Source: Macrostomum lignano (lineage: Eukaryota). From it: a DNA stretch of 54,222 bases. Made by a program: the position numbers and the translations under genes. The DNA is taken from contig NIVC01004222.1 in NCBI GenBank assembly GCA_002269645.1, positions 1-54,222 on the forward strand. Reading direction: 5' to 3'. Shown here in pieces: positions 204-50,494 of the stretch. Position 1 is the stretch's first letter, and the number at the start of each line of letters is the position of its first letter. The notes beneath the pieces are model-generated. The model saw only the letters and a list, made by a program, of their open reading frames with translations, was not told the origin of the DNA and ran no database searches.

Positions 204-3200
204 TCAGCTGGCCGACCCGCCGGCCTCGTCAGGATGCGCGGAGGCAGCGGCGGCCTCCTTGCAGAACTCGGCCAGCACGGAGTCCAGGCTGAACTTGGAC
301 CGTACTGGGCGAAAGAAGTAGCGCACGTGCTGCTCATTCTTGGTGCCCACCAGCTGGGCGATGGCGCGAAAGTCTTTGCCGTATCGGCGGACGCCCTGCA
401 CAGCCAGCAGCAGCTCGTCTCGGTCCACTTGCACGAGATCGGCGCCTCCGTGCGCGGCTCCTGGCGTTGAGAGTTGGGGCGATGAGGTGTACGCAACCAA
501 CACTACTGCTGGTTCGTAGTGCAGAGCTGGAATTACTCGCGATTGGCTTGAATGACTGAATTTGATGTTAAATTTTATACGAGGGGTGTCCAAAAGTAGT
601 GATACTTTTAACCGAAGCTCTCGTTCTATAGCTTCCTGTGATTTAAAATTTTATGAACTGATAGCGGCAAATCTCTTCTACAGACTGCTTTTTGAATTTT
701 TAAAATTGATACCAGAGAACAAAAGTTATACCCATGAAAGTAACAGTACCTGTACCATAGAGTTACATAAATTATAGCTGAGCTTCACGAGATCCATGCC
801 GAGGAAGCTTCGATGAATTGTTGATTTCGGCTTGTCCAACCTGTCAGCGATCTCTCTAATGGTCAAGAAGATCCAGAATGGAGTCCGCCAGTACATCAGG
901 TCGATGAACGTATGGCCGCCCCGTCCAATGCTGATCTGCCAAGTCAGTCCTTCCCTCGCTGAACTGCTCCATCCATCAATAAACTGTCATTTTGCTGACC
1001 GCAGAGGATCCGTGCGCAGAGCAAAGTTTTGCGTGAATTTCTGAGGCACCATGGCTAGCGCCCAAGAGTGAAGATGGTACTTTGCTGAGCAACAACTGAG
1101 TGCACATTCATGTGTGTTGTTGAGTATGGGCAATGAAATCATGAACGAATCGCAAAATGCAAGCTCCTCTGTTTGCAAGTAAAGTAATGCATTTAATGCT
1201 TCATTTTTTGCGCCTGATCCCGTCCATAGATAAATTTCAGTCAGTCACAGTGAGCATCATTTTGCAATTGGGCTTTGGTATTGCTTAAACAAGACATTTA
1301 TCGATGCCTTCTTAATGAATGAGTGCAGAAGTCGACTATTATAAATGTCGATATAATTTGTGTAACTCTATGGTACAGGTACTGTTACTTTCGTGGTATA
1401 ACTTTTGTTCTCTGGTATCAATTTTAAAAATTCAAAAAGCAGTCTGTAGAAGAGATTTGCCGCTATCAGTTCATAAAATTTAAATCACAGGAAGCTACAG
1501 AACGAGAGCTACGGTTAAAAGTATCACTACTTTTTGGACACCCCTCGTAGAATCCCTTTGAGATTTCCTAGAACCGCTTTCAGATTTCTAAGAATCCCTT
1601 TAAGATTTCCTAGAATTGATCGGATTTCCTAGAATCGCTTTCAGATTTCCTAGAACCGCTTTCAGATTTCTAAGAATCCCTTTGAGATTTCCTAGAATTG
1701 ATCGGATTTCCTAGAATCGCTTTCAGATTTCCTAGAATCGCTTTCGGATTTCCTATAATCGCTTTCGGATTTCCTAAAATCGCTTACGGATTTCCTAAAA
1801 TCGCTTTCAGATTTCCTATAATCGCTTTCAGATTTCCTAGAATCGCTTTCGGATTTCCTAGAATCGCTTTCGGATTTACTAGAATCGCTGTCATATTTCC
1901 TAGAATCACTCTCCGATCTCGTTAATTTCATTATTATATTTCATTTTATTGCATTTTGCTAGAATCTTCAAGACGCACAATGCGAGAATCAATTTTGATT
2001 TTATTGGCCTACTGCAAGTATACAACCAGACTTTACAGTTCTGACAACCGAAAAACCGGCAAGCCGGCACAGCAAAATAAATTCTTTCGCACCTGAAACG
2101 CCTCAGCCTCAGCGACTAGGCTGCTCCAACGCTGGGCGAGCTCGGCTCGATTGCGCTGCACCTGCGTGCGCGCCGTCACCAGCCGGTTGTCAAGGGCCGT
2201 CACAATCGCCTCGTTCTGCGAGCCGGGAGGCCGGGAGCCATGGAGATCATTTTAAAATTTGGTTAGTATGTCAATGCTGCCAGCATACTACTGACGGTAG
2301 CTTACAGTGGGTGCTGTAGATAATTCTAACAAACTACTGACAGTAGCTAACAGTGGGTGCTGCAGATAATTCCAACAAACTACTGACAGTAGCTTACAGT
2401 GGGTGCTGCAGATGATTCCAGCATACTACTGACAGTAGCTTACAGTGGGTGCTGCAGATGATTCCAGCATACTACTGACAGTAGCTTACAGTGGGTGCTG
2501 CAGATGATTCCAGCATACTACTGACAGTAGGCAAGGCTCACCTCGGCCAGACTCTGCTGCGACATGGTCAGCAGGGCTTCATAGTCCAGGAAAATGGCGT
2601 GCGGAATGCGCCGCCTCCGAGTCGGGCGATGAGGCGCCCGAGGCTGGGCGGCCTTGGGCGGAGACGAGCGCCGCCGCTGCTGGGACGGCGGCTGCTTCGC
2701 CCGAACTCGGCCGCAGCCGGGCGGCAGTCGGGGCAGCTCCGAGTCGGACAGGCTCGACTCCGAGTCGCTGTCGCCTCCCCGGCCGCCGACGCGCCTTCTC
2801 CGCGGCTGGCGCGCCGCTTGTCCAGCGCTGTGGACTTGGAGCGCGACTTCTTCCACTGGTAATAGTACTTGACCAGGTGCGGCACCGACTTGTCCGGCAG
2901 GGCGTGCGCGATCTTGCTGAACTGCTTGCCCTGCCGGCGGCGGGGTCGGGCAATAAGGGGTCAATTGGGGTCATGGTTTCTCTGATGATCTCTATTGAGG
3001 TCAGGTGGGGTCAAGAGCCCAAGCCTGGGGCTTCGGTTTCTCTGATGATCTCTATTGAGGTCAGGTGGGGTCAAGAGCTCAAGCCTGGGGCTTCGGTTTC
3101 TCTGATGATCTCTATTGAGGTCAGGTGGGGTCAAGAGATCAAGTAAAGTGTTGGGGTTTCGGCTTCAACAATTATCGCAGAGATGGCTTATCTTAAGGAG

Positions 3201-10600: not shown

Positions 10601-11235
10601 ACTAGAAAAATATTAATTTATTATTTATCCCTTGCATAGCCAAAAAATAGCCCCTAGTGCTAAAGCCTCTGGTGCAAAAGCCCATTGTGCTAAAGCCCCT
10701 TGTGTTGAAGCCCCTTGTATTCATTTAAAATTTAATTAGTAATAATATTATTAAATTAGTACTAATATTTTTATGATACTTGGCCTAATATATGACCAAT
10801 AATTATTTTGATGCATTTTGAAGGTTGTATATCACTGATTTGTCCAAAAACTTTTGTTAGAAGGTCATTATGTATAGCTTTGATTGCCTAGCTAATGCTA
10901 ATACCTATTTTATTAAAGATTTAAATGTCTTACCTAAAAACAAATTGATCTAGTCTAATTCCAAGTAGGATTAGAATCCATAGTTATAAATCATAGTCTA
11001 GAAGGTGGCCTTTATGCCAGAAAATAATGGTTAAATATAGATTGTAAATGTAAGCATTGGAGTTGGCTTAAATGTCTATTGCAAAGAAATGACACATTTT
11101 AACTTATATGTTTTAACTGCAGTTTGTATAATATACTTGAAGAGTTTTTGACTATTTTAAGGATTGTATTAATAATAACAGGGGTAACACTAGTGATATA
11201 TATAAGGGGTCTATCAACTTAAGCTTATATGCCTA

Positions 11236-11595
11236 TTTTTTTTATTAGAGGCAGGGGGGCTGTGTGCACCCTGGCGCACTTGAAGCGACATAGGCACACA
11301 ACCAGTGAGAGGCATTGCTGCCCATTCCGCCGACTCCCCTGAGCAGGCATAAAAGCGCGTGGATACATACTCAGGCACACACACAGGAGTGTACAGCGGC
11401 CCTAACTTTATATTATTGTTAGGCATGTACACTTCACTGCGCCTTGGGGGGTTGGCTCTCAAGGCCGTTAATTGCACGAGCAGAGCCAAGCCGAGATTCC
11501 AATTCAGCCCCAAATTAATGTGACTGCACTTGGAATCGAGCCTGGGTCGCTGGCACACCAGAGCAGCTGCGCTACGGCTGGGCTACAGCCCCCCT
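11236..11595 (-). mobile_element. Full-length tRNA-derived SINE (family 1)
   Basis: The minus-strand head GGGGGCTGTAGCCCAGCCGTAGCG...GGCTCGATTCC has A- and B-box-like motifs. The 3' end is CTCTAATAAAAAAAA. A 13-bp TSD GCTTATATGCCTA lies at 11223-11235 and 11596-11608. A second copy is at about 49810-50141. Confidence 0.85.
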
Positions 11596-11695
11596 GCTTA
11601 TATGCCTAGGATACTTAAAAAATTATTGATGCCTTATTTTGCAGGTTAATTTAAACTTAGTTCTAATAAATTAAGCCATTGCAATAGCATTTCTC

Positions 11696-14617
11696 ATGGC
11701 AAGATTATATGATTTAATAAATCAGCACCTGCCCAGTAACCAGAACTATACAAAGATCATAGGTTTTGCCCACTGCGACCCTACCATTCATGTCATGAAT
11801 GGCAAGGATACAGTTGATCGGGGCAAGTCGAAAACCCTTGGCCCGATGAAGCTGTCAGAGTCTGGATCGGCTGCAGGGCCAAATAGCCAGCAGCAGCTGT
11901 CCCAGGTGGGCGCCTCATCATCGGCCTACATGACTCAAGATAATGTAAATCTGGAGGCCACACAAAAGTACATCAAGATCCTGGAGGACAAGATTCGCGA
12001 GTACAGGCGCAACCTGGTGGATGAGCAGATGCACAGGGAGTCACAGACCTCCAAGGCCATTGAGGAGTTGAATAAGTTCGGCCAGGACTCAACCAAGCAG
12101 GAGCAGACGAAGCGGCGGCTGCAGCGGGAGCAGGGCGAGTTCACCACCAGGACGCAGAACATTCAGAAGAATATCCAGAAACTCGAGTTCAAGCTCAACG
12201 AGCTGAAGGCTCACGGAATTCCAAAGCAGGTGTGTGATCTACTGGCCTGGTTGAGGTAGCCAGTTTGAGTAAATTTAGTTGCTTAAGACAGGCTGAGAGT
12301 CAAGTACTTTGAGTTGTTGGGATTCAAGTAGTTTAAGCTGTTGGGATTCAAGTAGTTTAAGCTGTTGGGATTCAAGTAGTTTAAGCTGTTGGGATTCAAG
12401 TAGTTTTAGTTGCTAAGGAAAGGCTGGGATTCGAGTAGTTTGAGTTGCTAAGGAAAGGCTGGGATTCGAGTAGTTTGAGGTGCTAAGGAAAGGCTGGGAT
12501 TCGAGTAGTTTGAGTTGCGAAGGAAAGACTGGGATTCGAGTAGTTTGAGTTGTTGGGATTCGAGTAGTTTGAGTTGCTAGCTAAGGAAAGGCTGGGATTC
12601 GAGTAGTTTGAGTTGCTAGCTAAGGAAAGGCTGGGATTCGAGTAGTTTGAGTTGCTAGCTAAGGAAAGGCTGGGATTCGAGTAGTTTGAGTTGCTAGCTA
12701 AGGAAAGGCTGGGATTCGAGTAGTTTGAGTTGCTAGCTAAGGAAAGGCTGGGATTCGAGTAGTTTGAGTTGCTAGCTAAGGAAAGGCTGGGATTCGAGTA
12801 GTTTGAGTTGCTAGCTAAGGAAAGGCTGGGATTCGAGTAGTTGAAGATTTTCAGCTCATCACCTCCGCCGCACCCGCCAGGTGGTGCCAGACGACTATGT
12901 GCGTCAGCTGAAGAAGAAAGACGCCAAGAAGCACCGCCTGCTGCAAATGCCCAACCTGCTGAAGGCCAAGACGGCCTCATCCGGCGACCTGCTAGTTGGC
13001 GGCGCGGCGGCGGCCAGCGTTCCAGCAGGCGGCGGCAGCGGCGGGCCCGGCAGCGTCAGCGGGGTCGGCATCGAGCGGCCGAGCGTCGGCAGCCCACAGA
13101 AGAAGTCTCAGTCGCTGGAGCACGGAGCCGCTCCGCCGCCGCCGCTTTTCTCGCAGCAGCAGCAGCAGCAGTCGGGAGCGGAGTCTGTGCTCACCGTGTC
13201 CTCGTCGGAGGTGCCGAACACTGGCAAGAAGACCAGCCTGTCTGACGAAGAGGCCAGCCGGCTCGGGCAGAAAGCTGGCGGCGGCCCGCCAGTCACCTTC
13301 GGCCTGGGCGTCACCGGCGGCGGCGGTCCCCGGTCCACCACCAGCCGCTCCTACCGGCCGCCCAAGAGCCGCGCCTCGTCCTCCGTCAGCAGCGAGTCCG
13401 CCCGCTTCTTGTCGGCCAGCGAGGCGGCCGCTGCGGCTGCTGCTGCCGCCGCGTCTACGTCTCCGGCTGCCCCGGCTGTCAGCTGCGATCAAACCGAGTC
13501 CTTGCGCGAGCACTTCGAGCACCTGCTGCAGGAGCAGCGGCGGGCCCTCACCGACGAGCTGGACATTGTGCGCAACCGACTGCAGGACGAAGCTGGCGAT
13601 ATTCACAAGCTGGTGGACTCGGAAATCCATAAGCTGAGATATGACCAGCAGGTAATTGGCCGGCCCAGCCAGTGAATGAGATGAATAAGCCAGTGAATGA
13701 GATGACTTGAGTCAGTGAATGAGATTACTTGAGTCAGTGAATGAGATGACTTGAGTCAGTGAATGAGATGACTTGAGTCAGTGAATGAGATGACTGAGTC
13801 AGTAAATGGGACGACGGAGTCAGTAAATAGGATGACTTAGTCTGTGGATGTGTTGAAGGAGTCGGTGAGTCCAGTGCAAGCACCCCTTGCCCACACGCCC
13901 CCATACATGCGCAACCTTGGGAATCACTCGGCCGTTTCTATTGGCAACACACACATGTAAGTCGCTATTGGCTGAGAGCAGTCACGTGACTACTATTCCG
14001 TCCAATAGCGACTTACATGTGTGTGTTGCCAATAGAAACGGCCGGGTGAATCTCTAGGTTGCGCCCAAGCATGCACGCCCCCCCCCCCAATCCAGGAGCT
14101 GTCGGCCAGCCTGGACGACAACCAGAAGGAGCTGGAGAAGATGAAGGTGTTCCTCACCAACCTGTCCAAGGAGTTCAACAAGCTGATGCTGGTCGACCAG
14201 CAGATTGACGACATGAACAACAAGATCGCCGTGCTGTCCCGCGACCTCCAGGGCCCCGGCGCCTGCCCGCACAGCCGGCCGGACTCTGCCGCCACCACCG
14301 GCACTCGGATGCTGAACCTGCTGGTGGCGCTGCTGTCCTACGGCTTCGTTGCAGCCTCCTGCCTCATCAACCTGCTGCTGTGGCTGCTGGGCTTCCTGCG
14401 CAGCCGGCCGTTTGTCATCATCTGCGTGGCCGCGCTGCTGCTGGCGCTGCTGTTCCGCCAGTGGCTCGCGCTGGCGCCTCTGCTGACGCCCGACGGTCTG
14501 GCGGCCGCCGTGGCGCGCGGCTCGCCGCAGGCTGTGCGCCGATTTTTGTCAGATTTGGCGCTGGCGCTGAATAAACACGACGAGGCTTCGGCGGCCTCTG
14601 CCGCGGATGCGGGCTGA
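11696..14617 (+). CDS. TMCC: Transmembrane and coiled-coil domain family protein (TMCC/TEX28-like), 3 exons, ~608 aa
   Basis: Exons 11696-12229, 12881-13651 and 14096-14617 are all phase 0, GT-AG and open. The coiled coil ends QKNIQKLEFKLNELKAHGIPKQ, matching the TMCC-type KL.E.E.NGIP.Q motif. A second coiled coil and two C-terminal hydrophobic segments (MLNLLVALLSYGFVAASCLINLLLWLL; FVIICVAALLLALLFRQW) follow. Confidence 0.8.
12290..12841. repeat. 39-bp (and ~24-bp) minisatellite filling TMCC intron 1
   Basis: Tandem GATTCGAGTAGTTTGAGTTGCTAGCTAAGGAAAGGCTGG. Confidence 0.9.
13668..13830. repeat. 22-bp minisatellite in TMCC intron 2
   Basis: Tandem AGTCAGTGAATGAGATGACTTG. Confidence 0.85.
13929..14044. 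repeat. Perfect 43-bp-arm inverted repeat (hairpin) with 30-nt loop
   Basis: 13929-13971 is the exact reverse complement of 14002-14044. The loop contains the palindrome AGTCACGTGACT. Confidence 0.95.
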
Positions 14618-17641: not shown

Positions 17642-18675
17642 ATGCATCCAATCGCTGCGCTCTTCATCTTGGCTTTCTCAGTCTCTCTGGCAGAAGCCCA
17701 GAGCAGCCAGCAGCTGTGCCACACAGCCTTCAGGGAGGTCAGCAGCGGCTCCCTGTGCATCCGCAGCGCCTTCACCCGCACGCTGCCCGGCATCGCATCG
17801 GAGCTGCGGTGCTCCATCGAGTGCGGCGGAGAGCCGAGCTGCCAGGCCTTCACCATGGCCGACGGTCCGTGCCAGCTGTTCGTGTTTGACAGGTGCAGCA
17901 AGTCGGTGCGGGACTGCGGCTGCTCCCGGAGAGGCCGCCTGTTCGTGAAGCGGCAGCCGGGACTCGAGCCGGGCGCGCTGTGCCCGCCTGGCTACGCAGA
18001 CGAGCTGTGCGGAGTGAAGTACCGCCTGATCAACAGCACCGCCACCTGGTCAGCCCAGAAGCTCAGGTGCGTGGCTGGAATGGGTTGGGCTGAAATGGCA
18101 CCGCTTCCGTGCGGGTTCGATTCCGCGGTATGGCGGCCTTATCAGTTCGGGGTTCTCGTAGAATGTTGGCCTGAATTATGTGCAATTGCCACTCATTAGT
18201 AAGAGCCAACCCCAAGACGCACAGTGAGCACACTGCCGGAGGATGAAACTCAGGGCAGAGTTAGACTCGGAGGGTGTTTCCGTGTCCGTATCCATGTGTC
18301 AAATGGTAGCAGAAACGTCTCACGGCCTGAACTGCCTGAACTGACAGGTGCGAGTCGGATTCTGGCCTGGCGATGCTGGCCGATGTCACTAACTCGTCTG
18401 AGATGAGCCACGTTGAAGCCATGTACACCGCGCTCAGCCCGGGAGTCGCTGTCTACCTGGGCGGCTACCGCGTGTTTCCTGGTGCCGCTCAGACGGACGG
18501 CTGGCTCTGGACGGCCTGCAACATCACGGTGGACGATACGCTCTGGGGCTCTGGCGAGCCCAATTCGTTTGGGGAGAAGGCCACGGCTCGGTACCCGACA
18601 GTGCCGAAGCTGGTGGACATCACGGATTCGGGAGCCTACGGCGCCCTCTGCGAGTGCGTGTCGCCGTTTGATTGA
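17642..18675 (+). CDS. Secreted PAN/apple-like + C-type lectin domain protein, 2 exons, ~250 aa
   Basis: Exons 17642-18066 and 18348-18675 total 753 nt and stay open across a phase-2 GT-AG intron. Signal peptide MHPIAALFILAFSVSLAEA; PAN-type Cys pattern C.IEC.....CQAF......CQL; C-type lectin motifs CP.GY, TW..QK.RC, YLGG, WLW, WGSGEPN and terminal ALCEC. Confidence 0.8.
18067..18347 (+). mobile_element. tRNA-derived SINE (family 2) occupying the whole lectin intron
   Basis: A-box-like TGGCTGGAATGG at 18072, B-box GGTTCGATTCC at about 18114, short tandem tail CCTGAACTGCCTGAACTGA, and flanking direct repeat CAGGTGCG (18064-18071, 18345-18352). Confidence 0.65.
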
Positions 18676-19499
18676 TCGAGCTGGACAAGCACGCGAAGGG
18701 CAATATTGAAAACAGTTTAACAGCGATCTGGAATTGAGGTTACCTGATACTGAAGCAAGGTTTGAATGCCTCTGTTTAACTGTGAATTGCAACTCCTTTG
18801 GTATATCGAGTCTTGCTTGGCGTTTTTGATGGAGCCATGGAAATCTTAATACGCTCGTATAGAAAGCTACACTAAAATCCAGTTTTTTTGCCGCAAAATG
18901 CTTTAGCGTGATGGGAAAGTTAAATTTACAGCATCTCACCCTCTGCTCGTCCGAAATGCAAACAAATCGGTTTTTTGTCTGAGGTGGCTTCAAAAGTTTG
19001 TCGAGAGAAAGGATTAAAAAAGTGCTATAGGAGTCGCAATACACAGTAGGGTTTTTAACTGGATTTCTCAAAGATTTGCAATTTTGCGTGGCGATAGATT
19101 GGGGTTCTCCAAATGCAAATTAAATCAAGAAAAATCATATCAGAAAAATACACAAAGGAGACAGGAAGAACAGATTTTCTACTACTGTTTGCTTTTTGGT
19201 CTCTGGTAACATTCCGGGAAAAGATTGTGATGGCCTAAGCTGTGGATCCCTCCGCAGCCTTGGCCAAGAGTCTGCTTGCTCCCATTGACTACGGCACCCT
19301 GTTTGTTCCCCTCACTTTTCTCTTCACCCAATCTAAACAACTCCCCCATGCTATGCATGCACCGCCTGCACGCTTTTCTTTTCGTACCACAGCTAAGGCT
19401 AAGTTGGGGCCCAGGAGCCCACAAATGTAAAACTGGACACTCGACTTATGGTCACGCCTCATTGTCCGTCTGCCACTCGATGACCACTTCCCAGTGAAA

Positions 19500-24239: not shown

Positions 24240-25033
24240 CGCACCTCACTGGCCCTCTATGTATATTGCTTGCACGTATATATTTAAAACAAAATTTTAT
24301 TTCGTAAAATGTTATTTGCTTTTACAACATTTAAACAAAAGGTATAACTTAATTTCTTTTTAGCGTAAATTCAAATACACATTTTCTAAGAAAGTTCGCA
24401 AACGTAATATCTATACTGGACTGGAAGGCATTCTATATTACAAAACGAGGCACACTACATCACTAGTATTAATATAACATAACAAATACACTAGATTGAT
24501 CTAAGATCTATCTAGTCTATGTTGCTTGGACTTTAACTAAGTCTAGGTGTTGTCTAAAAATTATAAAATAGACTAAACTAATATGTCTATTTTAAAATTA
24601 TATGTAATATAGCTAAGCCCTCATCAAGTAAAATAGCATATTTAATGCCTATGACTACATGTATGTCATGTCATGATAAGATATTAAAGTAAATGTAGAT
24701 TTCTTAAATTAAAAAATTCCACTTTTTTAGTTTGTTCCATTTGCAACTTGCTTTGTTTTTAGGGCCATTCTTTGCTTCTTGTTTTGTTTTGCCTTTTCCT
24801 TTCTTCTGCATTGTAGTTGTACAAAAAGCAGATATTAAAAAATTCAATATACAGCTGTGCGCTATGAGTATAATTCTAGTATATCCTACATTTTAAACTA
24901 CATTGATAATTAATTAGCTTTGAAGACTCCATCTTAGCCTTTTACAATCCAGAGTATTTTGTAGAAACAAATGCTTCATTGACTGATTGCTGCAGCAGCC
25001 ACTGGCTGCCTTTGCCACTTTATGGCTTTACAG

Positions 25034-27248
25034 ATGACTCATTCTGTGAGCTTCGATCTGGAGGCTCCGGTCCGGAAACGCCTGCGAATGGAGGCGGCTG
25101 GAGAATTCGAACCCGGCAGTTCTCCCTTTCACTTGGAGCAGCTGCCAGAGGAGCTGCTCACGCAGATCCTGTCCGAGCTGGACCAGACCAGCCTCGGCCG
25201 GTGCGCTCAGCTGAGCAGGCGCTGGTGGCGGCTCGCGGCTGTGGCGCAAAATCCGCATTGATGGCGACGCCGTGGATGCTGGGCTGATGGAGCGGCTCAG
25301 AGACTGGCTGGGCGGCAGCGTGCGGGAGATCTCGGCCTGGGGGCTGACAGCCGAGAACCGGCTGCCACTGCTGTTGTCTGCATCCGCCAGCCTCACCTGC
25401 CTCAGCCTGCGGGAGGTGCATGGCGACGCTGCGGTGACGGAGGAGGTGCCCCGGCCTGCTGGAGCTGAGCATCACCGACTGCCAGAAGTCGTTGTCGGCC
25501 GCCTCGCTGAGCAGCCTGCTGTCCGGCTGCCCGCGCCTCTCGCTGCTGGAAATTCTCGGCAGTGCCACTGACGCGTTTGCTGACTGGCAGGACCGTTCGG
25601 TGCGCCAGCTGTTCGGTCAGTGCCGCTAGTTTTTCACTGGGCTAGTATGCAGGAACCGCCGTTCCAATCCAATACAGTCACGCTCCTGGCACCCCCGTGC
25701 ATGGGAATCTGCTTGAAGCCCCGGTGCTGCTTAGAAATGCATCAGAGCTGCTGAATTCCCCATCTCACAGCACGGGCCGCCCCACCTTTACTTTAAGGCA
25801 TTTGTCTAGAAAAGCCTGTTCTAAAGACAACTCGAAAGATAAGAAGAACGGATATCTACTGGACTTCTTTGCGCTTGCCACTCTTCTATACTAGTGCTTA
25901 CTCTAAATCCAATTCGATGGACTTGTGAAACCGCCCGGGACTCAACCCATACTGGATTTACTTTATCTTCTTAAGTTCAGACAGGCTTTCAAACAAATTT
26001 CCATAGAATTATTGAATAGCTTGACTGCCGGTGGTCCTTTATTCAATGCCCTCGCTGAACTCGCCACTCTCCAGAGTTGCCCCGCGTGCTGAGCATCGCG
26101 CCGAACCTGACGGAGCTGCGAGTGACAAGTTGCGGCAACACCTTCGACCTCGAGCCCGACCGGCACCCTGCGCCCGTGCCCGGCCTGAGGCACCTGAGCC
26201 TTGACTGCGAGGGGTCACGTGACGAGAATACGGAGATAGCATTGTGGCTGCTGCCCAGCCTGCCCTCACTTGAGAGTCTGCGTTTGGTGTCTTACCAAGC
26301 CTCAGAAAAGCACTTCCGCCAGATCCTCCGCTGCCTGCCTGCCGGCCTTGCGGACCTGAAGTTAAGATTCACGGAAATCGGTGCTCGTTCGGAGCTGGGC
26401 AGAGCGGTCCGCTGCCGCTAGGGCTTCAGCGGCTGCAGCTCACGGGGTCGTTCTTTGATGCGCCATGGAGCTTTCGGTTGTCTGGCGCTCTCAGCGGCTG
26501 TCCAGGTGAGTCCCGCTCACCTTGCCGCTCCTTTGGTAGATACCTGGATTGATGCTCAGACTGCTGCTCTCCCAGATGCTCAGACTGCTCCTCTCCCAGA
26601 TGCTCAGACTGCTGCTCTCCCAGATGCTCAGACTGCTCCTCTCCCAGATGCTCAGACTGCTCCTCTCCCAGATGCCCAGACTGCTGCTCTCCCAGATGCT
26701 CAGACTGCTGACTGCTGTCCCAGATGCTCAGACTGCTGCTCTCCAAGATGCTCAGACTGCTGACTGCTCTCCCAGATGCTCACACTGACAGCTATAAATT
26801 CCATTTAACTGCAGCGTTGACCCATGTTGAGCTGGAGGCGGGCATTGACGACCTGCTGCCGGCTCTGCTCTCCCGGCTGCCCCACCTGCGCTGCCTCCAC
26901 ATCCACAACTGCAGCCTCCTGACTCGCCAGGCCTGGGCGAATCTGCAAAGCCTCGCAGCCTGGCCACTCGATCTGATGGAGTTCCGGGCCCTCGGTTGCG
27001 CTGGCTCCAGCCTCACTGATGATGCGATGGCCGACCTGTGCGCCAGTCCGGTTGCCAGGGGACTGCGGCGGCTCCGCCTGTCCGACTGCAGCCAGTGGAC
27101 TGCCGCCGCCCTCGCCAGCATCGCCAGCGGCTGCCCGTGGCTCACTGAGCTCCAGCTGGAGGGCTTCAGGCGAGTCCCCCGCGATGAGCGCATCGAGGCG
27201 GCCTTCGAGCTGAGCATCGACTTGACTGCTTTCTGGCTGCAACCGTAG
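25034..27248 (+). pseudogene. F-box/LRR unit A (type I), disabled
   Basis: Exons 25034-25615, 26075-26505, 26815-27248. F-box LEQLPEELLTQILSELDQTSLGRCAQLSRRW followed by LRRs. Lesions: 11-nt deletion after the F-box, net -8 near 25445, 129-nt deletion near 25611, and +5 insertion near 26400. Confidence 0.85.
26550..26780. repeat. 24-bp minisatellite (CCCAGATGCTCAGACTGCTGCTCT) in intron 2 of unit A
   Basis: The same repeat occurs at 29555-29735 and 48105-49020. Confidence 0.9.
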
Positions 27249-27249
27249 C

Positions 27250-27600
27250 AACTCCCAGCTCTGCAACTGACTCCCTTCAGCTCTGCAACTGCCTCCCTTC
27301 AGCTCTGCAACTGCCTCCCTTCAGCTCTGCAACTGCCTCCCTTCAGCTCTGCAACTGCTCTGCAACTTCAGCTCTGCAACTGCCTCCCTTCAGCTCTGCA
27401 ACTGCCTCCCTTCAGCTCTGCAACTGCCTCCTTTCAGATCTGCAACTGCCTCCCTTCAGCTCTGCAACTGCCTCCCTTCAGCTCTGCAACTACCTCCCTT
27501 CAGCTCTGCAACTGCCTTCCTTCAGCTCTGCAACTGCCTCCCTTCAGCTCTGCAACTGCCTCCCTTCAGCTCTGCAAGTGCCTCCCTTCAGCTCTGCAAC
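27250..27600. repeat. 22-bp minisatellite (TCAGCTCTGCAACTGCCTCCCT) after the stop of unit A
   Basis: The same repeat follows units B (30210-30535) and F (49490-49745). Confidence 0.9.
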
Positions 27601-27997
27601 TTTTTCACAACTTGGACCAGCAAAATGTGTAAATTTGTTTTTTTTATCTAAAGAAGCTGCATTCCCCAATAAGGGACTTGTTTTCAAAAATGCGCACTGT
27701 TGTGCCCCATGAGCAGAGTGAGCAGTTTCAAAATAGTATTGCTGACGCAACCCCCTAATCTTATATTTACTTCAAGTAACATGTTAACCTGTTTACTTGT
27801 AAACCTGTTGTGGTGAGCCAACCACCAATTAGAAATAATGATAGGAAATCAATGCACTTTCTCGATGTGGCAGTATTTGATGCGTGCGCAGCGTTATTGC
27901 AGTTCTTGATCAATTTTTTTCATTTTTGTTGCTTCTTGACAACAGGAGGCGGTTGCTTCTGCCTGTTTCTTCAAATATTCTGTTTTCTTTGTTACAG

Positions 27998-30206
27998 CTG
28001 GAGCAGCTACCAGAGGAGCTGCTCACGCAGATCCTGTCCGAGCTGGACCAGACCAGCCTCGGCCGGTGCGCTCAGCTGAGCAGGCGCTGGCGGCGGCTCG
28101 CCACGCAGCCGCGGCTGTGGCGCAAAATCCGCATTGACGGCCGCACCGCAGATGCCGAGCTGATGGAGCGGCTCAGAGACTGGCTGGGCGGCAGCGTGCG
28201 GGAGATCTCAGCCTGGGGGCTGACAGCCGAGAACCGGCTGCCACTGCTGTTGTCTGCATCCGCCAGCCTCACCTGCCTCAGCCTGCGGGAGGTGCATGGC
28301 GACGCTGCGGTGACGGAGGAGGTGCCCCGGCCTGCTGGAGCTGAGCATCACCGACTGCCAGAAGTCGTTGTCGGCCGCCTCGCTGAGCAGCCTGCTGTCC
28401 GGCTGCCCGCGCCTCTCGCTGCTGGAAATTCTCGGCAGTGCCACTGACGCGTTTGCTGACTGGCAGGACCGTTCGGTGCGCCAGCTGTTCGTTGAGCTCA
28501 TCGGCCGCCTCACGGCGCTGCACCTGCCGGACATCGATGCTTCTGAGCTCCTTGCTGATCTGACAGAGTGTCCCCGGCTCTCCGTGTTGTCGGTGGGGCT
28601 GTCAGCCAGCCGCGGCTTCGGTCAGTGCCGCTAGTTTTTCACTGGGCTAGTATGCAGGAACCGCCGTTCCAATCCAATACAGTCACGCTCCTGGCACCCC
28701 CGTGCATGGGAATCTGCTTGAAGCCCCGGTGCTGCTTAGAAATGCATCAGAGCTGCTGAATTCCCCATCTCACAGCACGGGCCGCCCCACCTTTACTTTA
28801 AGGCATTTGTCTAGAAAAGCCTGTTCTAAAGACAACTCGAAAGATAAGAAGAACGGATATCTACTGGACTTCTTTGCGCTTGCCACTCTTCTATACTAGT
28901 GCTTACTCTAAATCCAATTCGATGGACTTGTGAAACCGCCCGGGACTCAACCCATACTGGATTTACTTTATCTTCTTAAGTTCAGACAGGCTTTCAAACA
29001 AATTTCCATAGAATTATTGAATAGCTTGACTGCCGGTGGTCCTTTATTCAATGCCCTCGCTGAACTCGCCACTCTCCAGAGTTGCCCCGCGTGCTGAGCA
29101 TCGCGCCGAACCTGACGGAGCTGCGAGTGACAAGTTGCGGCAACACCTTCGACCTCGAGCCCGACCGGCACCCTGCGCCCGTGCCCGGCCTGAGGCACCT
29201 GAGCCTTGACTGCGAGGGGTCACGTGACGAGAATACGGAGATAGCATTGTGGCTGCTGCCCAGCCTGCCCTCACTTGAGAGTCTGCGTTTGGTGTCTTAC
29301 CAAGCCTCAGAAAAGCACTTCCGCCAGATCCTCCGCTGCCTGCCTGCCGGCCTTGCGGACCTGAAGTTAAGATTCACGGAAATCGGTGCTCGTTCGGAGC
29401 TGGGCAGAGCGGTCCGCTGCCGCTAGGGCTTCAGCGGCTGCAGCTCACGGGGTCGTTCTTTGATGCGCCATGGAGCTTTCGGTTGTCTGGCGCTCTCAGC
29501 GGCTGTCCAGGTGAGTCCCGCTCACCTTGCCGCTCCTTTGGTAGATACCTGGATTGATGCTCAGACTGCTGCTCTCCCAGATGCTCAGACTGCTCCTCTC
29601 CCAGATGCCCAGACTGCTGCTCTCCCAGATGCTCAGACTGCTGACTGCTGTCCCAGATGCTCAGACTGCTGACTGCTGTCCCAGATGCTCAGACTGCTGC
29701 TCTCCAAGATGCTCAGACTGACTGCTCTCCCAGATGCTCACACTGACAGCTATAAATTCCATTTAACTGCAGCGTTGACCCATGTTGAGCTGGAGGCGGG
29801 CATTGACGACCTGCTGCCGGCTCTGCTCTCCCGGCTGTCCCACCTGCGCTGCCTCCACATCCACAACTGCAGCCTCCTGACTCGCCAGGCCTGGGCGAAT
29901 CTGCAAAGCCTCGCAGCCTGGCCACTCGATCTGATGGAGTTCCGGGCCCTCGGTTGCGCTGGCTCCAGCCTCACTGATGATGCGATGGCCGACCTGTGCG
30001 CCAGTCCGGTTGCCAGGGGACTGCGGCGGCTCCGCCTGTCCGACTGCAGCCAGTGGACTGCCGCCGCCCTCGCCAGCATCGCCAGCAGCTGTCTGTGGCT
30101 CACTGAGCTCCAGCTGGAGGGCTTCAGGCGAGTCCCCCGCGATGAGCGCATCGAGGCGGCCTTCGAGCTGAGCATCGACTTGACTGCTTTCTGGCTGCAA
30201 CCGTAG
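27998..30206 (+). pseudogene. F-box/LRR unit B (chimera: type II 5' end, type I body), disabled
   Basis: Exons 27998-28620, 29080-29510, 29773-30206. The 5' flank and F-box are identical to unit C; the body is nearly identical to unit A, including the -8 and +5 frameshifts. Confidence 0.85.
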
Positions 30207-30930
30207 CAACTCCCAGCTCTGCAACTGCCTCCCTTCAGCTCTGCAACTGCCTCCCTTCAGCTCTGCAACTGCCTCCCTTCAGCTCTGCAACTGCCTCCCT
30301 TCAGCTCTGCAACTGCCTCCCTTCAGCTCTGCAACTGCCTCCTTTCAGATCTGCAACTGCCTCCCTTCAGCTCTGCAACTGCCTCCCTTCAGCTCTGCAA
30401 CTGCCTTCCTTCAGCTCTGCAACTGCCTTCCTTCAGCTCTGCAACTGCCTCCCTTCAGCTCTGCAACTGCCTCCCTTCAGCTCTGCAACTGCCTCCCTTC
30501 AGCTCTGCAAGTGCCTCCCTTCAGCTCTGCAACTTTTTCACAACTTGGACCAGCAAAATGTGTAAATTTGTTTTTTTTATCTAAAGAAGCTGCATTCCCC
30601 AATAAGGGACTTGTTTTCAAAAATGCGCACTGTTGTGCCCCATGAGCAGAGTGAGCAGTTTCAAAATAGTATTGCTGACGCAACCCCCTAATCTTATATT
30701 TACTTCAAGTAACATGTTAACCTGTTTACTTGTAAACCTGTTGTGGTGAGCCAACCACCAATTAGAAATAATGATAGGAAATCAATGCACTTTCTCGATG
30801 TGGCAGTATTTGATGCGTGCGCAGCGTTATTGCAGTTCTTGATCAATTTTTTTCATTTTTGTTGCTTCTTGACAACAGGAGGCGGTTGCTTCTGCCTGTT
30901 TCTTCAAATATTCTGTTTTCTTTGTTACAG

Positions 30931-32748
30931 CTGGAGCAGCTACCAGAGGAGCTGCTCACGCAGATCCTGTCCGAGCTGGACCAGACCAGCCTCGGCCGGT
31001 GCGCTCAGCTGAGCAGGCGCTGGCGGCGGCTCGCCACGCAGCCGCGGCTGTGGCGCAAAATCCGCATTGACGGCCGCACCGCAGATGCCGAGCTGATGGA
31101 GCGGCTCAGAGACTGGCTGGGCGGCAGCGTGCGGGAGATCTCGGCCTGCGGGCTGACAGCCGAGCAGCGGCTGCCACTGCTTGTGGCCGCATCCGCCAGC
31201 CTCACCTGCCTCAGCCTGCGGGACATGGATCAACCACCCGCCCAGCTGGCCGTGACGGAGGCGGGCCGCAGCTGCCCCGGCCTGCTGGAGCTGCGCCTCG
31301 TTGATTGTCGAAACGGCCTGTCTGACGAGTCTCTAAGCTGCCTGCTGACCGGCTGCCCGCGCCTCTCGCTGCTGCAGATGGACAGCCGAACAGCCGCCTG
31401 CGATGCGGTCGGGTGGAGCTGCAGCCAGCAGCTGTTGGCTGAGCAGGTCTGCCGCCTCGCCAGCCTGTCAGTGAGAAGCTGGAGCAGCGCTGCTCCGATG
31501 CTCCGAGACCTGCCCGAGTGTCCGCTGCTCACCAGCTTCGCCACCTGCGGCGCTGAGCTGTCCAGTGAGTCTTTCAGGGGTTTCTGAGACCTGTTTGACG
31601 GACTTTACCTGAACTTCCATCGCTCCTAAAGATTTGCTGACTCCGCTGTCCCGGATGCCGGAGCTGACCGACCTGCGGCTTCGGTGCCGGAACTGGTGCC
31701 GCTCAGCAAGCGACCTGCAGCTGCTAGGCGGCGCGGCCCGGCTTCGCTGCCTCCGCATCGACAGCCGCTTTGTGGACGCCGCCTCGGTGCCTCCGCTGCT
31801 GGCCCGCATGCCGCAGCTGCGAAGCTTCCGGCTGAAGTCGTCAGCCAGGGTCTTCGTGTTGGACTGCCATGCCTGCGCGATCCTGCGAGCCCTGCCGGCG
31901 GGTCTGACAGACCTGGGCCTGAGCTTTGAGCACGCGGATTGGAGCTGCCGAGCCGGCGTCGGCCCACCTGCTGTGCTGCCGCCGAACCTGCGGCGGCTGC
32001 GGCTGGAGGGACTCCCGCCACGTGCGGATCAGCTGCGCCTGATGGAGCTGCTGGCCAGCTGCCCAGGTGAGCGGGTCTGTTGCTGGTGGCTGCTAAGGTG
32101 AGCGGGTCTGTTGCTGGTGGCTGCTAAGGTGAGCGGGTCTGTTGCTGGTGGCTGCTAAGGTGAGCGGGTCTGTTGCTGGTGGCTGCTAAGGTGAGCGGGT
32201 CTGTTGCTGGTGGCTGCTAAGGTGAGCGGGTCTGTTGCTGGTGTGGGCTGGTGGCTGCTCATGCATGTTAGGAACCAGTCATAACCTGCTCATATCTGCA
32301 GGCCTGACTTTTTTTAACCCTGGACTTCTGCACTGACGACCTGCTGCCGGCTCTGCTCTCCCGGCTGCCCCCCCTGCGCTGTCTCCACCTCACCGACTGC
32401 AGCCGCCTGACCCGCCAGGCCTGGGCGAATCTGCGACGTCTGCAGAGCCTCGGAGCTGCCACCCCCGACCTGCACGAGCTGCGTGCTCACAGGTGCAGCA
32501 GGCGCAGCCTCACTGATGAGGCGGTGGCCGACCTGTGCGCCAGTCCGGTTGCCAGGGGCCTGCGGCGCCTCAGCCTGTCATTTGACTGCAGCCAGCTGAC
32601 CGCCGCCTCGCTGGCCAGCATCGCCAGCGGCTGCCCGCTGCTGACCCGCCTGGTCCTGGCCGGGAGCGGCTTCGGGCAGGCCGACCTGCAGGCTTTCCGG
32701 CTGTCTTTTGAGCACTGCGTGACGGTGACGAATCACGGGCCCCTGTGA
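30931..32748 (+). CDS. F-box/LRR-repeat protein, unit C (type II)
   Basis: Exons 30931-31564, 31632-32066, 32302-32748 with GT-AG phase-1 introns. Open except for one extra T in a T7 run at about 32310 (possible sequencing error). No in-frame upstream ATG; it begins at a phase-0 acceptor TTACAG|CTG. Confidence 0.75.
32066..32242. repeat. 31-bp minisatellite carrying repeated donor motif AG|GTGAGC (unit C intron 2)
   Basis: About 6 copies of GGTGAGCGGGTCTGTTGCTGGTGGCTGCTAA starting at the true donor. Confidence 0.9.
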
Positions 32749-36802: not shown

Positions 36803-36992
36803 GCAAAAATATTTTCTATACGCAGAAATCTCTATCAAACAAAAAATCTTGGCTTGTAGAAGAATCTTTATGCTAAATATACTCAGTGCCTTACTGACTT
36901 ATTTCTTCACGTTAGAAATTTTTTATCTGCACCAAATCGTTGGGTTGATTTAGCGACATCTTGACTTTTATTTCTAAGGAGCACTGCTGACT

Positions 36993-37715
36993 GAGAAGCA
37001 AATGTCACTGAAGGAGAAGCAAATGTCACTGAAACAGAAGCAAATGTCACTGAAGGAGAAGCAAATGTCACTGAAGGAGAAGCAAATGTCACTGAAACAG
37101 AAGCAAATGTCACTGAAAGAGAAGCAAAAGTCACTGAAGGAGAAGCAAATGTCACTGAAACAGAAGCAAATGTCACTGAAAGAGAAGCAAAAGTCACTGA
37201 AGGAGAAGCAAATGTCACTGAAGGAGAAGCAAATGTCACTGAAGGAGAAGCAAATGTCACTGAAGGAGAAGCAAATGTCACTGAATGGAAAACAAATATC
37301 ACTGAAGGAGAAGCAAATGTCACTGAATGGAAAGCAAAAGTCACTGAAGGAGAAGAAAATGTCACTGAAAGAGAAGCAAATGTCACTGAAAGAGAAGCAA
37401 AAGTCACTGAAGGAGAAGCAAATGTCACTGAAGGAGAAGCAAATGTCACTGAAGGAGAAGCAAATGTCACTGAAACAGAAGCAAATGTCACTGAAAGAGA
37501 AGCAAAAGTCACTGAAGGAGAAGCAAATGTCACTGAAGGAGAAGCAAATGTCACTGAAGGAGAAGCAAATGTCACTGAAGGAGAAGCAAATGTCACTGAA
37601 GGAGAAGCAAATGTCACTGAAACAGAAGCAAATGTCACTGAAAGAGAAGCAAAAGTCACTGAAGGAGAAGCAAATGTCACTGAAGGAGAAGCAAATGTCA
37701 CTGAAGGAGAAGCTT
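36993..37715. repeat. 21-bp minisatellite (GAGAAGCAAATGTCACTGAAG)
   Basis: About 34 copies. Two plus frames (KQMSLKE, ANVTEGE) and one minus frame are stop-free. Confidence 0.95.
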
Positions 37716-38402
37716 TAGCACCAAAGGGGCGCCATCACCAAGGGCGCCATCACCAAGGGGCGCCACAGCTGCAGTAAAGAGGTTTTTGAGCCCACTTGCC
37801 AATCTCTTCCTGGCTATGCCCCTGTTATGCGGTACGAACATGTACATGTAGTAGTATGTAGGAAAGATACTTCAGAAGCAGATTTAAGTAAGGCTGAATC
37901 TATGAGCAAATTGTAAGTTGTTGCTATTCAAACCCACTTAGCAAGACTAAGCGCTGACGCAGACCCTTCTCGGGATACATGGATAATCTCGCTCTCTGTA
38001 GCGCTTAGGACAGGGAATTGGTGAGGTGATAAAGGCGAAAGCAGACAATTGACGAAGCAGCTGGGGCGCAAGCAGGCACGAACTCCCCCAAACGCCAAAG
38101 AAAAGAAATACAGACAGGGCGAAAGGGCATCTTTTAGGCAAGAGTGAAAAATGCACAGTTGAACAAAGAAACGTGAAAAACAAACAAGACAAAATTGCTC
38201 AAAACCGCTCGAAACGCAATGTCAGAGCCTAAATGGGCACGCAAGCAAATACACCGATTACGTCACTCCTCCAATGGCCGATGCGCTGGATCTCCTCGAC
38301 GGCAGGCCTGATCGGTGGGCCCACGTCCTCTGCGTAAGCCATCGGCAGACAAAGAACCCGTTCGGGAGCCTGCCGCCGCCGCCAAGAGCGCTTCAAGAAG
38401 AC

Positions 38403-46100: not shown

Positions 46101-46498
46101 GATTACAAGCCAACCATTTCGTTGCGTGACTCCAAAGCAACCAGGCGGCAGGTAGTCAGAGCAGTCGTCTCCACCATGAAGGCCCGCAAGCCTGGGAGTT
46201 GTGCATGTTGATGCGCAGTGAAGCGAGCACCAGGGGAAATAACAGTTATATACAGTATAGTTTTCATTTTCAGTCATTTGTTTTTTGTCTCTCTACCTCC
46301 AGTGTTCGGAGCTCTGAATGAAATCACTGAATTGCAGTTTTTGCAGGTATTAAATATATCGCTGTGCGCTGTGGATATAATTCTAGCATATCCCACCCTT
46401 GCAAATGAATTGGTAATTTTGCATTATAAAATGCAGAGCACTTTGTAGAGATAAATGCTTCAATGACTGACTGCCTTTGCCACTTCCCAGCTTTACAG

Positions 46499-49489: not shown

Positions 49490-49809
49490 CAACTTTCATC
49501 TCTGCAACTGCCTCCCCTCAGCTCTGCAACTGCCTCCCTTCAGCTCTGCAACTGCCTCCCTTCAGCTCTGCAACTGCCTCCCTTCAGCTCTGCAACTGTC
49601 TCCCTTCGGCTCTGCAACTGTCTCCCTTCAGCTGTGCAGCCGTCTCCCTTCAGCTCTGCAACTGCCTCCCTTCAGCTCTGCAACTGCCTCCCTTCAGCTG
49701 CAACTGCCTCCCTTCATCTCTGCATCTGACTCCCTTCAGCTCTTCAACTGACTCACTTCGGCTTTGCATCTCTCATTCAGAGAAGAAGGAAAATGTTCAA
49801 CTCAGTGGG

Positions 49810-50141
49810 TTTTTTTTATTAGAGGCAGGGTCAGGCGCACTTTAAGCGACATACAGGTAGGCACACAATCGGCGAGAGGCATTACTGCCCATTCCGCCGA
49901 CTCCCCTGAGCAGGCATACAAGCGCGCGGATACGTACGCAGGCACACACTCACACAGGAGTGTACAGCGGCCCTAACTTTATTTTATCGTTACACATGTA
50001 CACTTTACTGCGTCTCGGGGGTTGGCTCTCAAGGCCGTTAATTGCACGAGCAGAGCCAAGCCGAGATTGCAATTCAGCCCCAAATTAATGTGACTGCACT
50101 TGGAATCGAGCCTGGGTCGCTGGCATACCAGAGCCTGCGCT
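49810..50141 (-). mobile_element. tRNA-derived SINE family 1, second copy
   Basis: Colinear and highly similar to 11236-11595, from the A-tail to the B-box region; the extreme 5' end is diverged. Confidence 0.85.
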
Positions 50142-50494
50142 AGACCGCCCAGAGAAACTAAATTCCTAGACAAGAGACTAGTCCCTCAAAAATCTGCTGT
50201 TGCGCCTTTGAGCAGTTTTCAAGTAACACTCCTACACGTATTACTGACTCATTCCCTAACATCTGATGATTACTTCAAGTACCATGTATCCTGTTATCCT
50301 GTTAGCCTGTAAAGCCAGCGGACAGCCAGGTTAAAAATAAATGCATTTTCTGGATTAGCCAGTGTTGGTGCCTGCACCGTATGCTGGGCTGTGTTGCTGC
50401 AGTTTTGAACCATTGTTCAATTTTGTTGCTTCTTGACAACAGGAGGCAGTCGCTTCTGTCTGTTTCTTCAAATATTCTGTTTTCTTTCTTACAG

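What the first reader, a model, noticed from the sequence alone, without database searches (positions are those of the whole stretch)
18064..18352. An intron that is exactly a SINE insertion, with splice sites supplied by the target-site duplication
Seen: the single 281-bp intron of the PAN/C-type lectin gene consists almost entirely of a tRNA-SINE-like sequence (A box at 18072, B box GGTTCGATTCC, tandem tail). CAGGTGCG is repeated at both ends; the first copy gives the donor CAG|GTGCG and the second the acceptor CAG|GTGCG. Splicing therefore restores the pre-insertion reading frame precisely. Known: duplication of an AG|GT proto-splice site by a transposon is a proposed intron-gain route, documented mainly for DNA-transposon introners. 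Inference: this is a recent retroposon-generated intron. Caveat: five of the eight repeated bases are ordinary splice consensus.
Basis: partly seen in the sequence, partly recalled or inferred. Interest (0 to 1): 0.75.

Follow-up and report, generated by a model that had tools for sequence, protein, structure and literature searches.

The report
SINE-filled intron in a flatworm lectin gene
The only intron of a Macrostomum (flatworm) lectin gene is built mostly from a diverged copy of a short mobile element and is missing at that spot in related genes, so it was probably created by an insertion, but whether a duplicated target site supplied both splice sites is not proven.

Summary
The intron is 281 nt (18067-18347, GT-AG, phase 2). 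An exact 8-mer, CAGGTGCG, sits on both junctions. The window's only perfect B box lies inside the intron, and a 9-nt unit is repeated 2.1 times at its 3' end. Splicing gives a 250-aa PAN + C-type-lectin protein that aligns without a gap to nine Macrostomum relatives.

The intron core (18114-18297) is significantly similar, at about 65% identity, to a true SINE family. That family has 360-nt copies that are 92-94% alike, and one copy has a 13-bp target-site duplication and an A tail. Two paralogs have uninterrupted coding DNA at this site, and a third has an intron 5 nt away. Gain of the intron by insertion is therefore the best reading.

- No tRNA structure was detected.
- There is no sign that the insertion is recent.
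- The 8-mer is not shown to be a target-site duplication. Its first copy, plus 3 exon bases, runs collinear with sequence internal to the SINE, so microhomology or templated repair could explain the repeat.

I found no second copy of the intron's own subfamily in 266 kb, so its true ends remain unmapped. No RNA data were available. SINE-made introns have precedents, so this is a new member of a known kind.

The parts
17642..18066 (+). Exon 1: signal peptide, PAN/Apple-like domain and the start of the C-type lectin domain. It ends ...AAG CTC AG.
   Evidence: Translation. 89% identity to P0001 over exon 1. Alignment A4.
18064..18071 (+). First copy of CAGGTGCG, which holds the donor CAG|GTGCG.
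   Evidence: Lies inside the 24-mer 18061-18084 that matches SINE family A positions 252-275 at 19/24.
18067..18347 (+). The intron: 281 nt, GT-AG, phase 2, donor GTGCGT, 54% GC against 65% in the exons.
18061..18113 (+). Segment collinear with positions ~252-321 of SINE family A, which is that family's 3' half.
   Evidence: nhmmer second hit, E 0.11. blastn-short E 0.008. Permutation controls. The match of 18101-18113 to c2 positions 308-321 was read by eye.
18114..18124 (+). B-box-like motif GGTTCGATTCC.
   Evidence: The only zero-mismatch match to GGTTCGANNCC in the window. Aligns to GGCTCGATTCC of family A.
18114..18297 (+). SINE core. Securely homologous to family A positions 54 to ~240 at 65-67% identity.
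   Evidence: Independent profile, E 8.6e-9. Single-sequence nhmmer, E 1.4e-6 in 266 kb. Identity figures.
18300..18325 (+). Second, partial match to family A positions ~269-291 (AATGG..GCAG.AA..TCTCAC).
   Evidence: Semi-global alignment and MAFFT A1. Weak.
18325..18343 (+). Tandem repeat GCCTGAACT x2.1, just before the acceptor. It carries CTGAC/CTGAA branch-site-like motifs. There is no A tail.
   Evidence: TRF. Its match to the SINE tail is no better than shuffles.
18345..18352 (+). Second copy of CAGGTGCG, which holds the acceptor CAG|G followed by the TGC codon of the invariant Cys143.
18348..18676 (+). Exon 2: the rest of the C-type lectin domain, ending ...CECVSPFD and the stop.
11236..11595 (-). 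Reference full-length SINE (family A, copy c2), 360 nt, with an A8 tail. Perfect 13-bp target-site duplications TAGGCATATAAGC lie at 11223-11235 and 11596-11608.
49810..50156 (-). Second family A copy (c1), with an A tail and a diverged or truncated 5' end.

Best explanation
The window is Macrostomum (free-living flatworm) DNA. The 281-nt intron is specific to this gene lineage. It was most likely created when a member of a Macrostomum SINE superfamily was inserted, in sense orientation, into a once-continuous PAN/C-type-lectin exon at ...AAG CTC AG^G TGC GAG..., which is an AG|GT proto-splice site. The insert is bracketed by an 8-nt direct repeat. The spliceosome uses the GT in the upstream copy and the AG in the downstream copy. 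It therefore removes the insert plus one repeat copy and restores the Arg142-Cys143 codons exactly.

Shown: the coordinates, the repeat, the frame restoration, the homology of the intron core to a true SINE family, and the absence of an intron at this position in three paralogs.

Inferred: that insertion created the intron, that it happened by retroposition, and that the repeat arose from target duplication. The repeat may instead arise, wholly or partly, from microhomology between the target and the element's 5' end. Splicing itself is inferred from the ORF and from homology.
For: - The spliced product aligns without a gap across the junction to nine relatives. W136 and C143 are invariant and always six residues apart. 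The closest relative, P0001 (84% identical), reads ...SAQKLRCESDSGLAMLADV... across the junction.
- The core 18114-18297 matches a profile built only from other copies, E 8.6e-9.
- The family is a real SINE. Copy c2 is 360 nt with a 13-bp target-site duplication, an A8 tail and box A/B-like motifs. Its copies are 92-94% alike across the window and an M. lignano contig.
- Weak collinear matches bring SINE-like sequence to within a few nt of the donor. That leaves little room for an older intron.
- Paralog DNA: P0060/P0010 encode PAN and CTLD on one uninterrupted stretch (L003 13694-14364; L016 13452-14156). P0018 does the same (L007 11583-12305). The P0009 intron is phase 0 and lies 5 nt upstream.
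- The donor GTGCGT departs from GTRAGT only at +4. Its +1 to +5 bases equal the coding bases G-TGC-G that follow the acceptor, as expected for a copied target.
Against: - No second copy of the intron's own subfamily turned up in 266 kb of Macrostomum DNA or in metagenome and viral contigs. Its true ends are therefore unknown.
- It has no A tail, unlike the related family, and the last ~22 nt cannot be assigned.
- The first 8-mer copy plus 3 exon bases is collinear with SINE-internal sequence (19/24). The repeat need not be a classical target-site duplication.
- The arrangement is permuted relative to family A: 3'-half-like segment, then B box and body, then part of the 3'-half-like segment again.
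- At 65-67% identity to the nearest family there is no evidence that the insertion is recent.
- No tRNA structure was found.
- No RNA-seq data, ortholog or homeolog DNA were available.
- A third paralog has an intron only 5 nt away, so an old intron that shifted position is not fully excluded.
Confidence: 0.5

Rival explanations
1. An older intron at or near this position was later colonised by a SINE and then trimmed by deletions. The 8-mer at the two junctions is chance on top of the splice consensus and the conserved Cys codon.
For: - Most SINEs found in genes sit in introns that already existed. The P0009 paralog shows exactly that: a 600-nt intron holding nested SINE pieces, 5 nt from this position.
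- Five of the eight repeated bases are splice consensus, and G-TGC-G is constrained coding sequence.
- CAGGTGCG is over-represented in the window, 5 occurrences against 1.4 expected.
- Only 65% of the intron is securely SINE, and no A tail or internal target-site duplication is visible.
Against: - Two paralogs have no intron here, and the P0009 intron differs in both position and phase.
- SINE-like sequence appears to start right at the donor.
- I estimate the chance of an exact 8-nt boundary repeat at about 0.002 per intron.
- The donor's +3 to +5 bases, GCG, are non-consensus yet identical to the exon-2 bases.
Confidence: 0.2
2. The intron was created by insertion, but not by retroposition. 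A double-strand break in the exon was repaired by copying about one period of a tandem or dimeric SINE locus elsewhere in the genome. Microhomology between the exon (GCTCAGGTGCGAGTCGG) and a SINE segment (GCTCAGGGGAGTCGG) guided the copying and left the shared tract as the 8-nt direct repeat.
For: - The reconstructed target resembles SINE positions 252-266 on both sides of the junction. On the upstream side 9 of 11 bases match, a level reached by 3 of 537 CAGGT sites. On the downstream side AGTCGG follows, as it does after 10 of 2086 CAGG sites.
- The 24-mer matches at 19/24 (P about 3e-4).
- The insert is permuted relative to the SINE and has no A tail.
- Partial tandem SINE arrangements do exist (L001 10601-10701 next to 10692-10987).
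- From my own knowledge: new Daphnia introns flanked by short direct repeats were attributed to break repair (Li et al. 2009).
Against: - The downstream match needs a 2-nt indel, and all of these statistics are post hoc.
- The 3' junction similarity (TGCCTG..CT..CAGG) is weak.
- A distinct SINE subfamily whose own head resembles the family A 3' module would explain the permutation without any break repair.
- No donor locus was found.
Confidence: 0.2
3. The sequence is not a working intron. The gene is a pseudogene or is mis-modelled, and the 281 nt simply disrupt it.
For: - There is no RNA evidence.
- Pfam does not recognise the protein.
- The exact 250-aa product is in no database I could search.
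- The acceptor has a poor polypyrimidine tract, 53% pyrimidines in the last 30 nt.
Against: - Both exons are open in the right frames.
- All invariant Cys and Trp residues and the C-terminal CECVSPFD are kept.
- The GT and AG sit exactly where they restore the frame.
- Exon GC (65%) is much higher than intron GC (54%).
Confidence: 0.05

Closest known systems
Rice catalase CatA intron, created by insertion of a SINE (p-SINE1-like retroposon) into coding sequence. Iwamoto et al. 1998, as cited in PMC2394776.
   Same: A SINE inserted in a coding exon is removed as a spliceosomal intron, and the position is absent from related genes.
   Different: That case is in a plant and involves a different SINE. 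Here the ends of the element are not mapped and the splice sites lie in an 8-nt direct repeat. I could not read the original paper, so its details were not compared.
Alu 'intronization' in human 3' UTRs (Sela et al. 2007, PMC2394776).
   Same: A SINE insertion into an exon generates a new intron in an animal.
   Different: Those introns lie in UTRs, are alternatively spliced, and use mutated Alu-internal sites. This one lies in coding sequence and must be spliced precisely to make the lectin domain.
Introners: transposon families that create introns, often using an AG|GT target-site duplication (Gozashti et al. 2022, PMC9860276; 2025, PMC12130899).
   Same: The logic matches: the element plus one copy of a duplicated AG|GT-containing target is excised. 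The 2025 survey lists non-LTR retrotransposon-derived introners, about 5% of classified families.
   Different: Introners are defined by many near-identical introns in unrelated genes, and only one instance is seen here. Most introners are terminal-inverted-repeat DNA transposons. The words 'flatworm' and 'SINE' do not occur in that paper.
Intron gains in Daphnia flanked by short direct repeats and attributed to double-strand-break repair (Li et al. 2009; from my own knowledge, not checked here).
   Same: A new intron is bracketed by a 5-12-nt direct repeat that includes AG|GT.
   Different: The Daphnia inserts were mostly not recognisable mobile elements, whereas the core here is clearly SINE-related.
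Macrostomum SINE 'family A', defined here (window 11236-11595 and 49810-50156; L001 10692-10987).
   Same: They share the B box, the core (GTGCAATT...GAGCCAACCCC...CAGTGA...GTATCC) and the 3'-module motifs.
   Different: The intron is only 65-67% identical to it. The intron also has a different head (42 nt from A-like box to B box, against 43 nt in c2 and 29 nt in the L005 variant), a permuted module order, and a 9-nt tandem repeat instead of an A tail.

Membership tests
SINE (non-autonomous pol III retroposon) | Dispersed and multi-copy in the genome | tested here: inconclusive
   The superfamily is multi-copy. There are three copies that are 92-94% identical, plus fragments at three further sites in 266 kb. 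The intron's own subfamily has no second copy in that sample, and the whole genome was not available.
SINE (non-autonomous pol III retroposon) | Internal pol III promoter (A and B boxes) and/or a tRNA-, 7SL- or 5S-derived head | tested here: inconclusive
   The B box at 18114 is perfect and unique in the window. The A-like box at 18072 fits only with one inserted base and one mismatch. ARAGORN and Rfam detect no tRNA in the intron or in the related heads.
SINE (non-autonomous pol III retroposon) | 3' tail (A-rich or short tandem repeat) abutting the target-site duplication | tested here: inconclusive
   Family A has an A8 tail. The intron has GCCTGAACT x2.1 followed by GA before the second 8-mer. 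No other copy is available to show that this is a tail.
SINE (non-autonomous pol III retroposon) | Flanking target-site duplication | tested here: inconclusive
   An exact 8-nt direct repeat is present. It is confounded by the splice consensus, by the coding constraint, and by collinearity of the first copy with SINE-internal sequence. The reference copy c2 has a clean 13-bp duplication.
Introner / transposon-generated intron | Intron absent at the homologous position in related genes | tested here: met
   P0060/P0010 and P0018 have continuous coding DNA there. The P0009 intron is 5 nt upstream in a different phase. No ortholog or homeolog of this gene could be obtained.
Introner / transposon-generated intron | Intron co-extensive with one element insertion plus one repeat copy | tested here: inconclusive
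   65% of the intron is securely SINE, and about 85% if the weak collinear matches are included. The ends are unmapped.
Introner / transposon-generated intron | A family of near-identical introns in unrelated genes | tested here: not met
   No other intron of this type was found in the window or in 212 kb of M. lignano loci. The sample is small, about 0.03% of a genome that I recall as several hundred Mb.
Introner / transposon-generated intron | Splicing at the predicted junction seen in RNA | not testable with these tools
   No RNA-seq access. Support comes only from the ORF and the gap-free alignment.
PAN/Apple + C-type lectin-like domain protein | Recognisable domains | tested here: inconclusive
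   Pfam gives no hit at E<=1. PDB phmmer gives MIC5 PAN at E 0.04 and codakine CTLD at E 0.05, in the right order. Relatives at E 1e-112 to 1e-24 are named C-type lectin or Apple domain proteins by UniRef.

The most novel reading that the evidence does not exclude
Macrostomum SINEs of this superfamily may act as retroposon-type introners in an animal. On this reading they repeatedly enter coding exons at AG|GT sites, guided by microhomology between the element's GGTGCG-like end and the target, and are spliced out at once. That would explain why two paralogous lectin genes carry independent introns 5 nt apart, both filled with sense-oriented SINE sequence.
Probability: 0.1. Interest if true: 0.8.

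Novelty: new member of a known kind. Interest (0 to 1): 0.5.

Why it matters
Clear cases where the origin of an animal intron can be read from its sequence are rare. If the element's ends prove to coincide with the splice sites, this would be a clean example of a retroposon turning a coding exon into two exons without changing the protein. It would also occur in a flatworm genus with several sequenced species and hidden polyploidy, where the copies with and without the intron could be compared directly. If instead the SINE merely sits in an older intron, the finding is ordinary.

Tried and rejected
- The search for homologous proteins timed out three times. It then returned nothing for exon 2 and only P0001 for exon 1. 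No close paralog with DNA was reached that way.
The window therefore comes from an assembly or species that is not held.
- The pattern GTGCAATTN{9,17}AGAGCCAACCCC gave no hit in viral contigs. It gave six hits in metagenome contigs, none of which matched the SINE profile, so they are chance hits.
- tRNA identity was rejected as unsupported.
- Assigning the intron's last 25 nt to the SINE tail, or to positions 291-315, scored no better than shuffles.
- A terminal-inverted-repeat DNA-transposon reading of the 11-nt inverted repeat in copy c2 was dropped, because that copy has an A tail and a 13-bp target-site duplication.
- L002 (P0005, a Logan contig) has an uninterrupted ORF. I could not tell whether it is cDNA or genomic DNA, so it was not used as evidence.
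- Literature searches found no described Macrostomum SINE.

Full report
**Where the window comes from.** Exons are GC-rich and spacers AT-rich, minisatellites are abundant, and the genes include F-box/LRR and ELM2-SANT types. A full HMMER search with the spliced protein found 59 relatives. The best ones are all Macrostomum lignano proteins, named 'C-type lectin domain-containing' or 'Apple domain-containing' by UniRef. The closest, P0001, is 84% identical. None of ten window-encoded proteins is in the 15-billion-protein collection. The window is therefore Macrostomum DNA, but from an assembly or species that is not held.

**The observation.**
- The ATG is at 17642. Exon 1 ends at 18066, the intron is 18067-18347 (281 nt, GT...AG), and exon 2 runs to the stop at 18674-18676.
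- The intron splits the Arg142 codon as AG|G, so it is phase 2.
- CAGGTGCG lies at 18064-18071 and 18345-18352. The identity is exactly 8 nt.
- Unspliced, the frame stops at 18197. Spliced, the 250-aa product aligns to nine relatives with no gap at the junction. Trp136 and Cys143 are invariant and always six residues apart.
- GGTTCGATTCC at 18114 is the only perfect B-box match in the 54 kb.
- GCCTGAACT is repeated 2.1 times at 18325-18343.
- No tRNA is detectable by ARAGORN or Rfam, and the head folds no better than shuffles.

**Is the intron a repeat?** Yes.
- Local alignment, blastn and nhmmer link it to a repeat seen at window 11236-11595 (-), at window 49810-50156 (-), and inside the single intron of the M. 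lignano paralog P0009 (L001 10692-10987).
- These three copies are 92-94% identical to one another.
- The copy at 11236-11595 is 360 nt. It ends in ...CTCTAATAAAAAAAA and is flanked by a perfect 13-bp duplication, TAGGCATATAAGC. It has TAGCCCAGCCG at position 11 and GGCTCGATTCC at position 54. Structurally it is a SINE, although Rfam sees no tRNA in it.
- A profile built from these three copies alone, without the intron, hits window 18114-18297 at E 8.6e-9. Identity is 65-67% over 175 columns.
- More diverged fragments occur at L003/L005 ~2980-3060 and at L007/L014/L015.
- The intron belongs to this superfamily but not to the young family. No second copy of its own type exists in 266 kb of Macrostomum DNA or in metagenome or viral contigs.

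**Where the element ends.**
- At the 5' side, the profile gives a second, weak hit (E 0.11). Window 18061-18099 aligns to family positions 246-279, which lie in the 3' half of that family.
- blastn-short gives 18061-18084 GCTCAGGTGCGTGGCTGGAATGGG against c2 252-275 GCTCAGGGGAGTCGGCGGAATGGG, 19 of 24 matches. Only 2 of 5861 random window 24-mers, and 0 of 334 AGGT-anchored ones, match the family that well.
- Further collinear pieces are 18101-18113 to c2 308-321 (read by eye) and 18300-18325 to c2 269-291.
- The intron therefore reads as a 3'-module-like head, then B box and core, then a partial 3' module, then the 9-nt tandem repeat.
- SINE-like sequence thus reaches the donor. It also runs through the first 8-mer copy and three exon bases.
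- Given a CAGGT site, only 3 of 537 such sites in 266 kb match GCTCAGGGGAG at 9 of 11 or better.
- On the other side, exon 2 starts GTGCGAGTCGG, and AGTCGG follows CAGGGG in the family. That is true of 10 of 2086 CAGG sites and needs a 2-nt indel.
- The last ~22 nt of the intron cannot be assigned, and there is no A tail.
- The 8-mer is real. Reading it as a plain target-site duplication is not secured. The upstream copy may be element sequence, or a microhomology tract used in 5' joining or in templated repair.

**Is the intron position old?** I recovered DNA for three M. lignano paralogs.
- P0060/P0010 (44% identical in the PAN domain) encode PAN and CTLD on one uninterrupted stretch. The site reads ...AAC ACT TGC GAT AAA....
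- P0018 has aa 33-273 in one exon.
- P0009 has a single 600-nt intron between Tyr149 and Thr150. It is phase 0 and lies 5 nt upstream of the homologous point. It too holds SINE sequence in sense orientation, though it is not filled by it.
- Intron positions in this family are therefore not conserved, which favours gain.
- The DNA of the closer relatives (P0001, P0003, P0008) could not be obtained.

**Mechanism.** The best reading (about 0.5) is that a SINE-family element was inserted into a continuous exon at CTCAG^GTGCG. The GT of the upstream repeat copy and the AG of the downstream copy are used as splice sites, so the coding sequence is restored. The donor GTGCGT differs from the GTGAGT or GTAAGA donors of three mapped paralog introns only at +4. 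Its +1 to +5 bases equal the exon-2 bases G-TGC-G.

The rivals are:
- An older intron colonised by a SINE, with the repeat arising by chance (0.2).
- Templated double-strand-break repair that copied one period of a tandem SINE locus through microhomology (0.2).
- A non-functional gene (0.05).

'Recent' is not supported. The element is 33-35% diverged from the nearest family. The perfection of the repeat says nothing about age, because all 16 bases are under splice or coding constraint.

**Comparison with what is known.**
- A SINE insertion that created a coding-region intron is on record for rice catalase A, and Alu insertions create 3'-UTR introns in humans (PMC2394776).
- Introner surveys report 1,093 families in 201 species. 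These include non-LTR retrotransposon-derived families, about 5% of those classified. Flatworms and SINEs are not mentioned in that paper (PMC12130899).
- The defining introner feature, many near-identical introns, was tested on the small sample available and not met.
- I therefore file this as a probable new member of a known kind, a single SINE-derived intron gain, and not as an introner family.

**Verdict.** Interest is moderate. One BLAST against a whole Macrostomum genome, plus RNA-seq, would settle it.

Noticed in passing
window 11223-11608 (-): An intact 360-nt SINE copy with a perfect 13-bp target-site duplication (TAGGCATATAAGC) and an A8 tail. Its 5' end, AGGGGGGCTGT, is the reverse complement of ACAGCCCCCCT, which sits 17 nt before the tail. 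The element RNA could therefore form a panhandle.
   Followed up: partly
window 49810-50156 (-): A second copy of the same SINE with an A tail. Its first ~15 nt are replaced or truncated, a block before the tail is deleted, and no clear target-site duplication is visible.
   Followed up: partly
L001 10448-11047 (M. lignano NIVC01001858.1): The single intron of paralog P0009 lies 5 nt from the homologous position of the window intron. It also contains sense-oriented SINE sequence (10601-10701 plus 10692-10987, a partial tandem). Its boundaries show no direct repeat.
   Followed up: partly
window 18061-18066 plus 18348-18358: The reconstructed pre-insertion exon sequence GCTCAGGTGCGAGTCGG closely resembles an internal SINE segment (GCTCAGGGGAGTCGG). 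Each side is a roughly 0.5% event among comparable sites. The cause is unexplained.
   Followed up: partly
L007 15323-15640, L014 13834-14150, L015 13151-13470: Three homeologous copies of one locus share an older SINE-body fragment. It is preceded by a 21-nt minisatellite (GGGGTGAGCTGTAGGTTCGC)n that resembles the SINE 5' end, and it lies inside an intron of a Ras-family gene.
   Followed up: no
L003 about 14020-14041: An A-run one base longer than in the copy that encodes P0060 truncates the annotated P0010 model. The C-type lectin domain continues in another frame. This is an assembly indel or a real frameshift allele.
   Followed up: partly
window 25000-32100 and 46400-52800: A cluster of tandemly duplicated F-box/LRR genes, with copies up to 100% identical over 300 nt. 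They are separated by minisatellites with 19-24-nt and 46-nt periods, some of which read through as long repetitive ORFs.
   Followed up: no
window 12515-12881 and 36840-37750: Near-perfect minisatellites: a 39-nt unit repeated about 9 times, and a 21-nt unit repeated about 40 times. The first lies inside or next to a GC-rich coding region.
   Followed up: no
window 2088, 2874, 47066: CAGGTGCG occurs three more times in the window, 5 in total against 1.4 expected. I did not examine whether these are splice sites.
   Followed up: no
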